This document shows, in pieces, positions 6,199 to 20,350 of a stretch of 64,000 bases of DNA. Both the position numbers and the translations under genes were made by a program. The notes beneath the pieces are model-generated. The model worked only from the letters and a program-made list of their open reading frames with translations. It did no database searches and had not been told where the DNA came from. Each line of letters opens with the position of its first letter. Within the stretch, counting starts at the first letter, position 1. Where the stretch lies: assembly GCF_048593235.1 (NCBI RefSeq), contig NC_133617.1, positions 627,296,958 through 627,360,957 of the forward strand. The letters run 5' to 3'. Source of the DNA: Sminthopsis crassicaudata (taxonomy: Eukaryota).

Positions 6199-6436
6199 GT
6201 GAGGGGGTAGGGGATGCCTGGTCCTAAATTAGGAGGATGAGTAATCGCTGTAGATTTGTTAGAGGCATGAGTTAGGGTAATGAGGATACCAGAGTTAGGA
6301 AGGCAGACTTGAAGGGCTCTGAGCCAGGGGGTGGGGGTGCCAGGGTCTGGGGTAGCCGGTTAAAAAGCCTAGGACTAAATTAGGAAAGCAGGGTGGTTGG
6401 ATCTTAATGTTCACTCTTTCCTTCTTGACTCCTAGG

Positions 6437-8705
6437 ATGTTGGCTTTGGTTCTCCTTGCCCTGTTCTGTGTCTCAGCTGAATCCGGTAAGTGATCTGTAG
6501 TATAGGATGCCTAATATCAGAGAAGGAACCTGGTTTTTGAGAAGTGTATGGAATAGACATTCAAGCTTGGGTCTGGAGAGGGGGCAGATCTGTGGAAGAA
6601 CTCCTAGGGATGGTGACAGAGCCTTGGTGGAATTGCCACTTTTTTTATCCCCTTTATCAATTGTTTTGTCTCCAGTTCAGCCACGGTCATCCTCCTACAA
6701 TGGGGAGTATGGAGGAGGTGGAGGAGAACGCTTCTCCCACTCAGGCAATCAGTTAGATGGCCCCATCACTGCCATCCGAATCCGGGTCAACAGATACTAC
6801 ATTGTTGGGTAAGAATCCCTAGTGGGGCTGGCCCTCACTATTCATCCCTCTTTTGTTCTTAGATTTCTTCAGTTAATCTTCCACCCCTCTCATTCATCTT
6901 TCCTGTTGTGTTGTTTTTTAATAAAGCATCTCCTTCCAGGGACATATTCCAATCATGAGTCCCAGTCTACCAAGTCTCAGGCATAGTCAGATTCCTTGCT
7001 TTAGGATCCTTCGTTTTGCTTGTTGCCAATATTTGAGGCATTTATATGTAAATACCTATCACTGGCTTCTACCAGGTTTGTCTCCTGTGAATCTTTGGAA
7101 TCTCTATTGCTGTATTTCCTACATTGGCACTATTTTCTACACTAGCTAGTTTATAAAGTCCGGTAGGCAGTTTTATTTTCCTACTTTATTTTCAGCTTTA
7201 ATCCTTTTGATTATATTTGAAAGCTTCCAGGCAAAAACCTTACCAGTCCTTGTTAGATACTCTCTATCCTTGGCCAAAATCACCATTTCATATATTTTAG
7301 GTTAGGGTCCAAAAAACAAAGCTTATTGCCTAACATCTTCCTAACCAGTCAGCCAAACGAAAATTAAATATTAGTTAAGATCCTACTGTGTGCCAGGTAC
7401 TGTGCTAAATGCTGGACCAGGTGTTTATTTCCCAGAATGGCCTTCTCTTCTGAAACTTTTGCCTTTGATTGACGGCACTGAGAGCCTTCAATTTCTTCTC
7501 CCAAACTTCATTAACCCTGACAATGCTTTGAGATTCCTTCTGGTTGTATCATTGGTGACCACATGCATCATAAGAAGTAGTTAGCAGTCAGTGGGTTTGA
7601 AAAGTCTTTGGAGTTTCTCTGTATTCTCCTGGATTCATACCTTGGTTTGTTCTCCTTATTTTTAGTGCCAAGTTAACAAAGAACTGCCTCAAAAATTCAT
7701 TAGCAAGGAAACAGAAACCAAGATTATTCATTTCTTTCTCCTTCAACCTTGACCTGATGATTTCTCTCCTGATAATATCAGTGGACCCAGGGCTCCTAAT
7801 TTGACCCAATACTTTTTATCACTTCTGTGAATTAAATAATGACATCCCTCATTCACTCCCTGTGATTGATAGATGAAAGAATTAGGATCAGGAAATACTA
7901 TGTGACATAATAGCACCTTCTCCCAGGATTGCTGCAAGGATAAGTTAATATTTGTAAAGAACTTTGCAAACTTTAAGGCACTATTTAGATGCTTGCTTAT
8001 TATTATTAAGGGTATAATATTCTATCTAAATATATATCTCCCCTCTATCTGGTACAGTGTTTTATATAGAGTAGGTGCTTGATAGATGTCTGCCATGTTT
8101 ATAATATATAATATTCGGTCTCCCATGGGAGACAGCTAGGTGGCCCAGTGGATAGAGCACCAGCCTTGAATTCAGGAGGACCCAAGTTCAAATCCAGTAT
8201 CAGACACTTAAAACTTCCTAGCTGTGTGACCCTGGGCAAGTCACTTAACCCCAGCCTCAGGGAAAAAAAAATGATAATAATAATAATAATATTCGGTCTC
8301 CCAGCCAGCACATTATTCTGTTTTTCTTGCTCGTAGGATGCTAAATACTTCCCTCCCTTTTTCTTTTCTCCTTCCTCTCCCAACTCCAGCCTCCAGGTCC
8401 GATATGGCAAGGAATGGAGCAACTATGTTGGGGGTTCTCAGGGTGACCTGGAGGAGATTTTCCTGTACCCTGGGGAATCAATCATCCAAGTGTCTGGCAA
8501 ATATAAGTACTACGTTCGGAAACTGGTCTTTGTGACAGACAAGGGCCGCTACCTGCCTTTTGGCAAGGACACAGGCACCAGCTTCAATGCTGCCCCACTG
8601 TACCCCAACACCGTTCTGAGATTCTTCAGTGGCCGCTCTGGCTCCCTCATCAATGCAATTGGCCTACACTGGGATGTTTACCCCAGTGAATGCAGCAGCT
8701 GCTAA
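6437..8705 (+). CDS. ZG16: Zymogen granule protein 16 (secreted jacalin-related lectin), 165 aa
   Basis: Coding exons 6437-6485, 6676-6808, 8390-8705 (498 nt, GT-AG, phases match). Signal peptide MLALVLLALFCVSAES, GG loop EYGGGGGERFSHSGNQLDGPIT, C-terminus GRSGSLINAIGLHWDVYPSECSSC, closely matching human ZG16. AATAAA at 8778-8783. Confidence 0.96.
8126..8285 (+). mobile_element. WSINE1-type marsupial CORE-SINE with 18-bp TSD, in ZG16 last intron
   Basis: tRNA-derived head (cagctaggtggcccagtggatagagc; gttcaaatcc), CORE gtgtgaccctgggcaagtcacttaacc, A/(AAT)n tail; TSD ataatattcggtctccca at 8108-8125 and 8286-8303. Confidence 0.92.
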
Positions 8706-9039
8706 ACATCCGCAGCAAAGAAGTCCTGTCACCTGAGAGCTTCCCCCTCCCCTGCCCCACCTCTACTAATGGTTTCAAATAAAAGGATGTTGCTAAAGCC
8801 AGTGTGTGGAAGTGTGCTTCTGTTGTATGTCTCTAACCCAGAGCAAGTGTACCTATGTTTGTATATGTCTCAAAGGGCAATAATTCTTTCTGATATCAGG
8901 CCAAAGGACACTTGGGAGTATCTCAAACAGTCTTAATCTCTCTGAGCCAGCTTTCTTTTCAATAAAATGAAGATAACAACATCTCTCTTAATTTTACAGG
9001 GTTATGGTTGGGCTCAGGTGAGATAATATAGAGGATTTT

Positions 9040-9041
9040 TT

Positions 9042-9081
<40 letters not shown>

Positions 9082-9092
9082 TTTTTTTTTTG
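9040..9092. repeat. (CTTT)n microsatellite plus poly-T
   Basis: About 10 perfect tttc units seen directly. Confidence 0.95.
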
Positions 9093-9269
9093 TTGTTGTT
9101 TTTGCTGTTTTACTCAGAATTCAATTTGGACTGTGCTTTTTAAGTTGTTTAGAAGGTTGTGTTGAGAGAGCATGGCAAAAAGTGCTTTCTTTACTCTGTC
9201 ATCTAGCTCCCACCTCTCCCTTTCCCGCCTCTATCCCGTTCTCCTTTTTCCCCTACATTTTCTTTAGTG

Positions 9270-15036: not shown

Positions 15037-15272
15037 NNNNNNNNNNNNNNNNNNNNNNNNNNNNNNNNNNNNNNNNNNNNNNNNNNNNNNNNNNNNNNNN
15101 NNNNNNNNNNNNNNNNNNNNNNNNNNNNNNNNNNNNNNNNNNNNNNNNNNNNNNNNNNNNNNNNNNNNNNNNNNNNNNNNNNNNNNNNNNNNNNNNNNNN
15201 NNNNNNNNNNNNNNNNNNNNNNNNNNNNNNNNNNNNNNNNNNNNNNNNNNNNNNNNNNNNNNNNNNNNNNNN
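15037..15272. other. Assembly gap (236 N)
   Basis: Run of N. Confidence 1.
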
Positions 15273-20045: not shown

Positions 20046-20350
20046 NNNNNNNNNNNNNNNNNNNNNNNNNNNNNNNNNNNNNNNNNNNNNNNNNNNNNNN
20101 NNNNNNNNNNNNNNNNNNNNNNNNNNNNNNNNNNNNNNNNNNNNNNNNNNNNNNNNNNNNNNNNNNNNNNNNNNNNNNNNNNNNNNNNNNNNNNNNNNNN
20201 NNNNNNNNNNNNNNNNNNNNNNNNNNNNNNNNNNNNNNNNNNNNNNNNNNNNNNNNNNNNNNNNNNNNNNNNNNNNNNNNNNNNNNNNNNNNNNNNNNNN
20301 NNNNNNNNNNNNNNNNNNNNNNNNNNNNNNNNNNNNNNNNNNNNNNNNNN
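20046..20350. other. Assembly gap (305 N)
   Basis: Run of N. Confidence 1.

What the first reader, a model, noticed from the sequence alone, without database searches (positions are those of the whole stretch)
8652..8654. ZG16 naturally carries Asp-to-Asn at the mannose-binding residue
The binding loop reads GRSGSLINAIG (codon AAT, Asn149), where human has GRSGSLIDAIG. Human Asp151 is the key jacalin-type mannose-contacting residue, and as I recall D151N is the standard mutant used to abolish mannose binding. The GG loop also reads GGGGGERF versus human GGGGGKRF, which loses a basic residue linked to heparin/GAG binding. The gene is otherwise intact (signal peptide, terminal Cys pair), so this lectin may have shifted ligand specificity, which matters for gut mucus-bacteria interaction. 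ATC AAT could derive from ATC GAT by CpG deamination (inference).
Basis: partly seen in the sequence, partly recalled or inferred. Interest (0 to 1): 0.7.

Follow-up and report, generated by a model that had tools for sequence, protein, structure and literature searches.

The report
Marsupial ZG16 lectin with natural Asn149
The gut lectin gene ZG16 in this marsupial really does carry asparagine where human ZG16 has its sugar-gripping aspartate, but this holds for many mammals (other marsupials, bats, cats, rabbits), so it is a widespread natural form of the protein and not a quirk of one species.

Summary
Codon AAT at 8652-8654 is in frame in the last exon of an intact three-coding-exon ZG16 gene (165 codons). 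It aligns with Asp151 of solved human ZG16p. The GG loop has Glu where human has Lys36.

The base is not an assembly slip.
- The window is most likely fat-tailed dunnart, not Tasmanian devil.
- The devil orthologue encodes the identical 165-residue protein.
- All 18 coding differences between the two are synonymous. One is in this codon: AAT here, AAC in devil.

The change is not specific to this animal.
- Asn is also present in Antechinus, bilby, opossum and the KIF22-adjacent ZG16 of platypus and echidna.
- It is present in 36 of 120 ZG16 cluster representatives, including bats, carnivores, rhinoceros, lagomorphs, several rodents, a colugo, a whale, snakes and two frogs.
- Dromiciops and diprotodont marsupials keep Asp.

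The ZG16 papers I could search call Asp151 conserved, and the engineered D151N diminishes mannose binding. I read this gene as a constrained, functional "Asn-type" ZG16 with a weakened canonical mannose pocket. That reading is inference.

The parts
6437..6485 (+). ZG16 coding exon 1: ATG and hydrophobic signal-peptide-like N-terminus (MLALVLLALFCVSAES), phase-1 end, donor GT at 6486
   Evidence: Sequence read; translation. It matches residues 1-16 of RefSeq protein P0121. An in-frame upstream ATG at 6407 gives the Sminthopsis isoform X1 N-terminus.
6676..6808 (+). ZG16 coding exon 2: start of the jacalin domain with GG loop GGGGGERF; Glu34 codon GAA at 6726-6728 (human Lys36); Arg35 and the two Arg of IRIR kept
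   Evidence: Acceptor AG at 6674-6675 and donor GT at 6809-6810 were read.
8390..8705 (+). ZG16 coding exon 3: rest of the jacalin domain, binding loop, C-terminal CXXC (Cys162, Cys165), stop TAA at 8703-8705
   Evidence: Translation. Pfam Jacalin PF01419 E 2.9e-16. 83% identical to human ZG16p chains, E 1.9e-58.
8640..8654 (+). Binding loop G-S-L-I-N: a GXXXN in place of the GXXXD motif of mannose-type jacalin-related lectins; Asn149 codon AAT at 8652-8654
   Evidence: The devil orthologue has AAC at the same codon.
8778..8783 (+). AATAAA polyadenylation signal, 73 nt after the stop codon
   Evidence: sequence only; transcript end not shown by reads.

Best explanation
This is the single KIF22-adjacent ZG16 orthologue of a dasyurid marsupial. 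The species is most likely the fat-tailed dunnart; the protein is identical to the Tasmanian devil's. It encodes an intact, secreted, jacalin-fold lectin under strong purifying selection. Its canonical sugar pocket keeps every mannose-contacting element of human ZG16p (Gly of the GG loop, Gly-Ser-Leu of the binding loop, Tyr104 equivalent) except the carboxylate: Asp151 is Asn149. The neighbouring heparin-site Lys36 is Glu34. The Asn state dates back at least to the common ancestor of dasyurids, and probably of dasyurids plus bilby. It is one instance of a recurrent Asn-type ZG16 found in many mammal orders, some snakes and frogs. It probably arises easily because ATC-GAT contains a CpG. Inferred mechanism: the protein still folds and works as a secreted gut/pancreas lectin. 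Binding of neutral alpha-mannose in the canonical pocket is weakened, as in the engineered human D151N. The selected function therefore rests on something else: polyanion or bacterial cell-wall binding, or partners of the conserved Tyr-Pro-CXXC tail.
For: Shown here:
- Gene structure and in-frame Asn codon.
- Jacalin domain.
- Alignment to human ZG16p structures with Asn opposite Asp151.
- Synteny ZG16 > kinesin motor exons at 32.2-32.9 kb > C2H2 zinc-finger ORF at 38.3-39.5 kb > CD225 ORF at 45.3-46.3 kb. Platypus and wallaby also have ZG16 just upstream of a kinesin gene.
- Only one ZG16 copy in the window.
- Window versus devil: 18 differences in 498 coding bases (495 codon bases plus the stop), all synonymous (dS 0.167; P about 9e-12 under site-proportional neutrality). 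The Asn codon is AAT here and AAC in devil.
- Asn in Sminthopsis, Sarcophilus, Antechinus, Macrotis and Monodelphis. Asp in Dromiciops, Notamacropus (two genes), Petaurus and Vombatus.
- Census of 120 cluster representatives: D 69, N 36, T 7, S 4, H 2, Y 1.
- At least 11 Asp/non-Asp changes on the gene tree.
- The platypus Asp-type copy reads ATC GAT, a CpG.

From the literature:
- The Asp151 side chain binds mannose O4 and O6. D151N diminishes mannose-probe binding and enhances heparin binding (PMC4059138).
- Human ZG16B lacks the GXXXD Asp (Lys177 instead). That paper's abstract reports that it binds commensal bacteria, and its title presents it as a cell-wall polysaccharide probe (PMC10235990).

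Suggestive:
- Non-Asp ZG16s also more often lose Gly147 (24/42 keep it, against 53/54 of Asp types), Ser148 and Lys36.
Against: No binding was measured, and Asn can still donate and accept hydrogen bonds. A natural Asn-type pocket might therefore retain useful mannose affinity, perhaps through compensating changes. In the dunnart the rest of the loop is unchanged, which fits continued use of the pocket as well as it fits indifference to it. Glu34 removes a basic residue, so the 'enhanced heparin binding' seen for human D151N cannot simply be transferred. The associations with positions 36, 147 and 148 are raw counts. The phylogenetically independent-pairs test had only 4 usable pairs and was not significant (median p 0.25 to 1). 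The species assignment rests on an exact match to the Sminthopsis isoform X1 N-terminus and about 91% non-coding identity to devil, not on a genome record.
Confidence: 0.6

Rival explanations
1. Functionally silent variant: the Asn-type pocket binds mannose-type glycans about as well as the Asp type in its native context, so Asp and Asn are near-neutral alternatives that flip back and forth at a mutable CpG site.
For: There are many independent Asp/Asn changes (at least 11 on the gene tree). The dunnart keeps every other pocket residue. The paper describes human D151N binding as 'diminished' and gives no measured residual affinity. The Asp-type codon context contains a CpG.
Against: Engineered D151N in the 83%-identical human protein clearly reduces binding to mannose probes. 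Outside mammals and snakes the Asp is almost invariant: lizards, turtles and most amphibians keep it, which argues against neutrality. Non-Asp lineages also tend to lose Gly147 and Ser148.
Confidence: 0.2
2. Ancient paralogy: mammals inherited two ZG16 genes, an Asp/Lys type and an Asn/Gln-Glu type as seen in tandem in platypus. Lineages differ in which copy they kept, so the dunnart gene is an old Asn-type paralogue rather than a substituted orthologue.
For: Platypus and echidna each have both types. In platypus they lie 16 kb apart in tandem, and the Asn type sits next to KIF22 as in the dunnart. The mosaic of Asp and Asn among placental orders is hard to map on the species tree.
Against: A tree with the four monotreme sequences held together is slightly better than the free tree (lnL +6.3, AU p 0.60), so a monotreme-only duplication is fully compatible with the data. 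All nine marsupial sequences, Asp and Asn types together, form one supported clade (96 SH-aLRT). Human Asp-type ZG16 is also the KIF22 neighbour, though this last point is my own knowledge and was not tested here.
Confidence: 0.12
3. Artefact or decay: the AAT is an assembly or sequencing error, or the gene is a lectin on its way to becoming a pseudogene.
For: No raw reads could be laid on the codon.
Against: Two independent devil assemblies encode Asn with a different codon, AAC. Four further marsupial RefSeq proteins have Asn. None of the 18 coding differences from devil is non-synonymous. The open frame, splice sites, CXXC tail and poly(A) signal are intact. Independent samples hold 0.78-0.79 of the stretch's 31-mers.
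Confidence: 0.02

Closest known systems
Human ZG16p (zymogen granule membrane protein 16; PDB 3APA, 3VZF, 7O3I)
   Same: Same three-coding-exon gene next to KIF22. 83% identity over exon 3. Same jacalin beta-prism domain, Gly-rich GG loop, Gly-Ser-Leu-Ile binding loop, Tyr104 equivalent, Arg37 and Arg55 equivalents, and Tyr-Pro plus CXXC tail.
   Different: Asn149 in place of Asp151, the mannose O4/O6 ligand. Glu34 in place of Lys36, a heparin-site residue. Two residues shorter.
Engineered human ZG16p D151N mutant (Tateno 2012 as cited in, and Kanagawa 2014, PMC4059138)
   Same: The dunnart binding loop SGSLIN is letter-for-letter the loop of the human D151N mutant.
   Different: The natural protein also has Glu at position 36 and about 17% other differences, and it has been kept by selection. 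The mutant's phenotype (less mannose binding, more heparin binding) is a lead for the natural protein, not a measurement of it.
Human ZG16B / PAUF
   Same: A jacalin-fold paralogue that lacks the GXXXD aspartate, yet its paper reports binding to commensal bacteria and presents it as a cell-wall polysaccharide probe (PMC10235990). This is a precedent for a working family member without the Asp.
   Different: ZG16B is only distantly similar (E 7.9e-10 to exon 3). It has a rebuilt loop with Lys at the site, not a single Asp-to-Asn change, and sits at another locus.
Mannose-specific jacalin-related plant lectins (BanLec, Heltuba, artocarpin, griffithsin)
   Same: Same fold, same three-loop sugar site, Ca-independent.
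   Different: They carry the GXXXD motif. This protein has GXXXN.

Membership tests
Jacalin-like lectin domain (Pfam PF01419, beta-prism I) | Significant match to the family profile | tested here: met
   Exon 3 translation: E 2.9e-16, 60.6 bits against a cut-off of 22, profile positions 39-136. Exon 2 alone (43 aa) gave no hit, as expected for a short piece.
ZG16 orthologue | Close full-length similarity to characterised ZG16p | tested here: met
   E 1.9e-58 and gap-free alignment of all 104 exon-3 residues to human ZG16p chains. 100% identical to RefSeq ZG16 of Sminthopsis and Sarcophilus.
ZG16 orthologue | Conserved position upstream of KIF22 (then MAZ, PRRT2) | tested here: met
   Kinesin motor exons at 32.2-32.9 kb. 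zf-C2H2 ORF at 38.3-39.5 kb and CD225 ORF at 45.3-46.3 kb. ZG16 is followed by a kinesin gene in wallaby and platypus.
ZG16 orthologue | Secretory signal peptide and C-terminal Tyr-Pro...CXXC tail | tested here: met
   Hydrophobic N-terminus and YPSECSSC tail read from the sequence. The tail conservation is described in PMC9291870. No signal-peptide predictor was run.
Mannose-binding-type jacalin-related lectin | GXXXD motif in the binding loop (the Asp binds O4 and O6 of mannose) | tested here: not met
   The loop is G-S-L-I-N (window 8640-8654), with Asn opposite Asp151. The motif definition is from PMC4059138.
Mannose-binding-type jacalin-related lectin | Gly-Gly loop supplying main-chain NH to O3/O4 | tested here: met
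   GGGGG is kept, and the Gly35 equivalent is invariant in all 96 aligned sequences.
Mannose-binding-type jacalin-related lectin | Measured binding to alpha-mannosides | not testable with these tools
   Needs recombinant protein, then glycan array or ITC.

The most novel reading that the evidence does not exclude
ZG16 exists across mammals in two recurrent functional forms. One is an Asp151/Lys36 form that binds mannose and heparin. The other is an Asn151 (usually Glu/Gln36) form that has given up canonical mannose recognition. The second form arises repeatedly at a CpG and is then followed by loosening of Gly147 and Ser148. If so, mannose binding is not the conserved function of ZG16, and species such as cat, rabbit, bats, opossum and dasyurids are natural D151N 'knock-ins' for working out what ZG16 really does in gut mucus.
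Probability: 0.35. Interest if true: 0.6.

Novelty: new variant of a known kind. Interest (0 to 1): 0.4.

Why it matters
ZG16 is thought to help keep bacteria away from the colon epithelium and is studied as a mannose- and heparin-binding lectin. Its Asp151 is repeatedly described as conserved and essential (PMC4059138, PMC9291870). Whole mammalian orders carry Asn there in an otherwise tightly constrained protein. This means either that the canonical mannose pocket is dispensable for the selected function, or that specificity differs between species. Either case affects how mouse and human results are generalised. It also offers ready-made natural variants for testing. For this one gene in this one marsupial the point is modest: an annotated, ordinary orthologue carrying the state typical of its order.

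Tried and rejected
- Read-level confirmation and expression. The look-up of sequencing runs listed 20 holders in 8 studies.
- DNA of other marsupial orthologues, to read their codons. Wallaby, opossum and sugar glider loci came back without DNA. Only devil and platypus DNA was obtained.
- Covariation of position 151 with positions 36, 147 and 148. Raw counts are striking, but the independent-pairs test had only 4 pairs on supported branches and was not significant. I reject it as a demonstrated result and keep it as a lead.
- Ancient-paralogue reading. The AU test did not reject a monotreme-only duplication.
- tblastx of platypus KIF22 5' exons against the window gave nothing convincing. The kinesin was found by a Pfam scan of ORFs instead.
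- Tasmanian devil as the source of the window, suggested by the best UniRef name. Rejected: only about 91% identity in introns and flanks.
- The spliced model was never searched as a joined sequence. Exons were searched apart by reference, and the identical database protein P0121 stood in for whole-protein alignments. Exons were concatenated only inside a script, to count synonymous and non-synonymous differences.

Full report
**What is in the sequence**

The + strand of the window carries a compact ZG16 gene.
- Coding exon 1 runs 6437-6485. It holds the ATG and a hydrophobic leader, with donor GT at 6486.
- Exon 2 runs 6676-6808 and holds the Gly-rich GG loop.
- Exon 3 runs 8390-8705 and ends in TAA.
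- The borders are canonical AG/GT, and an AATAAA lies at 8778-8783.
- The three pieces add up to 165 codons.
- The codon at 8652-8654 is AAT. It is in frame and is number 149, inside the loop G-S-L-I-N.
- Exon 3 alone matches Pfam Jacalin (E 2.9e-16).
- Exon 3 aligns without gaps to the solved human ZG16p chains (E 1.9e-58). Asn lies opposite the Asp of S-L-I-D-A-I-G, which is Asp151.
- The GG loop reads GGGGGER against human GGGGGKR, so Glu34 stands for Lys36.

**Which animal, and is the base real**

The best-named database hit was a Tasmanian devil entry, but the window is not devil.
- Two devil assemblies (loci L001 and L002, 99.97% alike) are only about 88-93% identical to the window in introns and flanks.
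- An in-frame ATG at 6407 reproduces exactly the N-terminal extension of Sminthopsis crassicaudata ZG16 isoform X1. It does not reproduce the devil's extension.
- Earlier notes of this scan on the same genome also speak of the fat-tailed dunnart.

The mature 165-residue protein is identical in dunnart and devil (P0121). Across the 498 coding bases the two species differ at 18 positions, all synonymous. This gives dS 0.167 and no non-synonymous change in about 375 non-synonymous sites. The chance of that under site-proportional neutrality is about 9e-12. One of the 18 differences is the third base of the codon in question: AAT in the window, AAC in the devil. Asn has therefore been kept through a synonymous change. 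This rules out an assembly slip more firmly than read depth would.

Raw reads could not be consulted. The run search found 20 holders in 8 studies, including independent samples with 0.78-0.79 of the 31-mers. Nothing from those places was used afterwards. Expression in this species therefore remains unshown.

**Orthology**

- Only one ZG16-like sequence exists in the 64 kb window (tblastn).
- Downstream on the same strand lie kinesin motor exons at 32.2-32.9 kb, a C2H2 zinc-finger ORF at 38.3-39.5 kb and a CD225-domain ORF at 45.3-46.3 kb.
- This fits the ZG16-KIF22-MAZ-PRRT2 order. The gene names come from my own knowledge; the domains are from the calls.
- Wallaby and platypus ZG16 are likewise followed within 4-7 kb by a kinesin gene.
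- No second dasyurid ZG16 protein appeared among the 124 database relatives found (120 listed). This is not a whole-genome proof.

**How widespread the Asn is**

Among marsupials:
- Asn is present in Sminthopsis, Sarcophilus, Antechinus, the bilby Macrotis and the opossum Monodelphis.
- Asp is present in Dromiciops, wombat, sugar glider and both wallaby genes.

In monotremes both platypus and echidna have two genes. In platypus they are a tandem pair.
- An Asp/Lys-type "ZG16-like" gene (codons ATC GAT) lies 16 kb upstream of an Asn/Gln-type "ZG16" (codons ATA AAT).
- The Asn/Gln-type gene in turn lies 4 kb upstream of the kinesin gene.

Among 120 representatives of 90%-identity clusters, the Asp151 column reads D 69, N 36, T 7, S 4, H 2, Y 1, plus one misaligned fragment. 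Asn occurs in:
- all four bats;
- felids, a sea lion, panda and hyaena;
- white rhinoceros;
- rabbit and pikas;
- kangaroo rat, beaver and gundi;
- a colugo and a blue whale;
- snakes and two frogs.

Lizards, tuatara, turtles and most amphibians, together with primates and murid rodents, keep Asp.

A quick maximum-likelihood tree of 96 full-length sequences needs at least 11 Asp/non-Asp changes. It is poorly resolved inside mammals, as expected for 165 residues. The nine marsupial sequences form one supported clade whatever their residue (96 SH-aLRT). Holding the four monotreme sequences together gives a slightly better likelihood than the free tree (AU p 0.60). Recurrent substitution is thus a better reading than sorting of two ancient paralogues, though the latter is not excluded.

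The Asp-type codon context ATC GAT contains a CpG. It remains inference.

**What the substitution probably does**

Kanagawa et al. 2014 (PMC4059138) report the following.
- The Asp151 side chain accepts hydrogen bonds from mannose O4 and O6. Gly35, Ser148 and Leu149 supply hydrogen bonds to the other mannose oxygens (for Gly35 and Leu149 through main-chain atoms), and Gly147 is listed among the residues that contribute to mannose binding.
- The D151N mutant shows diminished binding to mannose probes.
- Heparin binding of that mutant is rather enhanced.
- Lys36, Arg37 and Arg55 form the heparin site.

The dunnart loop S-G-S-L-I-N is exactly the loop of that mutant, and all other pocket residues are kept. 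Glu34 removes one of the three basic residues, so the heparin result cannot simply be transferred.

Across the family, non-Asp ZG16s keep other pocket residues less often than Asp types do (raw counts).

| Residue | Kept in non-Asp types | Kept in Asp types |
|---|---|---|
| Gly147 | 24 of 42 | 53 of 54 |
| Ser148 | 13 of 42 | 44 of 54 |
| Lys36 | 3 of 42 | 41 of 54 |

This is what one would expect if the canonical mannose pocket is under weaker or different constraint once the Asp is gone. The phylogenetically independent-pairs test had only four usable pairs and was not significant, so I report it only as a lead.

Human ZG16B has Lys at this position. Its paper reports that it binds commensal bacteria and presents it as a probe of cell-wall polysaccharide (PMC10235990). 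This shows that the fold can serve as a lectin without the Asp.

My best reading is a functional, constrained Asn-type ZG16 whose neutral-mannose binding is weakened. Its selected role would lie in other ligands or in the conserved Tyr-Pro-CXXC tail discussed by Javitt et al. 2021 (PMC9291870). The identity and constraint of the gene are shown. The change in binding is inferred.

**Comparison with what is known, and novelty**

The gene itself is annotated in RefSeq, so it is not new. It passes the tests for a jacalin-fold protein and for a ZG16 orthologue. It fails the one sequence feature that defines mannose-type jacalin-related lectins, the GXXXD motif.

In the papers I could search, Asp151 is called evolutionarily conserved. 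Five full-text searches found no mention of natural Asn at this site. That library lacks many subscription papers, so this is absence of evidence only.

I class the finding as a new variant of a known kind. It is of moderate interest as a family-wide pattern and of low interest as a property of this single species.

- The spliced model was not searched as a joined sequence. Exons were searched apart by reference, and the identical database protein P0121 was used for alignments and trees.
- Exons were concatenated only inside a script, to count synonymous and non-synonymous differences.
- The human protein returned by the search (P0023) served only as a numbering reference in protein alignments.
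- No human contig was fetched.
- A metagenome-derived fragment identical to the human C-terminus (P0028) was left alone.
- The N runs at 15037-15272 and 20046-20350 were left as they are.

Noticed in passing
window 8108-8303: A tRNA-derived SINE with an A-rich tail (8126-8287) sits in ZG16 intron 2, about 100 bp upstream of exon 3. It is flanked by a perfect 18-bp direct repeat (8108-8125 and 8286-8303). The devil locus appears to have the empty site, because the blastn blocks abut there, so this would be an insertion in the dunnart lineage.
   Followed up: partly
L003:10001-11342 and L004:10001-12498 (platypus CM014201.1, 26.649 and 26.667 Mb): Platypus has a tandem pair. An Asp/Lys-type ZG16-like gene lies 16 kb upstream of an Asn/Gln-type ZG16, which is followed by a kinesin (KIF22-like) gene. 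Echidna has the same two types. The AU test does not reject a monotreme-only duplication (p 0.60).
   Followed up: partly
proteins P0044, P0105, P0107, P0110-P0112, P0114-P0116, P0119 (rabbit, one contig): Rabbit has at least ten ZG16(-like) protein clusters on one chromosome. They carry Asn, Thr or Ser at the Asp151 column, and many have a Pro/Ala-rich C-terminal extension in place of the CXXC tail. This is a lineage-specific expansion of non-Asp ZG16 genes.
   Followed up: no
protein P0052 (Monodelphis, GCA_027887165.1): The same 160-residue Asn-type ZG16-like protein is encoded at two places on one opossum chromosome, which suggests a recent duplicate.
   Followed up: no
window 6407-6436: An in-frame ATG 30 bases upstream of the main start reads through the exon-1 acceptor and gives the RefSeq isoform X1 N-terminus of Sminthopsis crassicaudata. 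This helped to identify the species. The devil differs here.
   Followed up: yes
window 9040-9095: A (CTTT)n microsatellite followed by a T run lies about 260 bp downstream of the ZG16 poly(A) signal.
   Followed up: no
Two N runs lie between ZG16 and the kinesin gene. None of these was touched further.
   Followed up: no
window 8800-32200: The gap between the end of ZG16 and the first recognised kinesin motor exons is about 23 kb here, against 4-7 kb to the start of the kinesin gene in platypus and wallaby. Earlier KIF22 exons were not located, and the stretch holds the two N runs.
   Followed up: no
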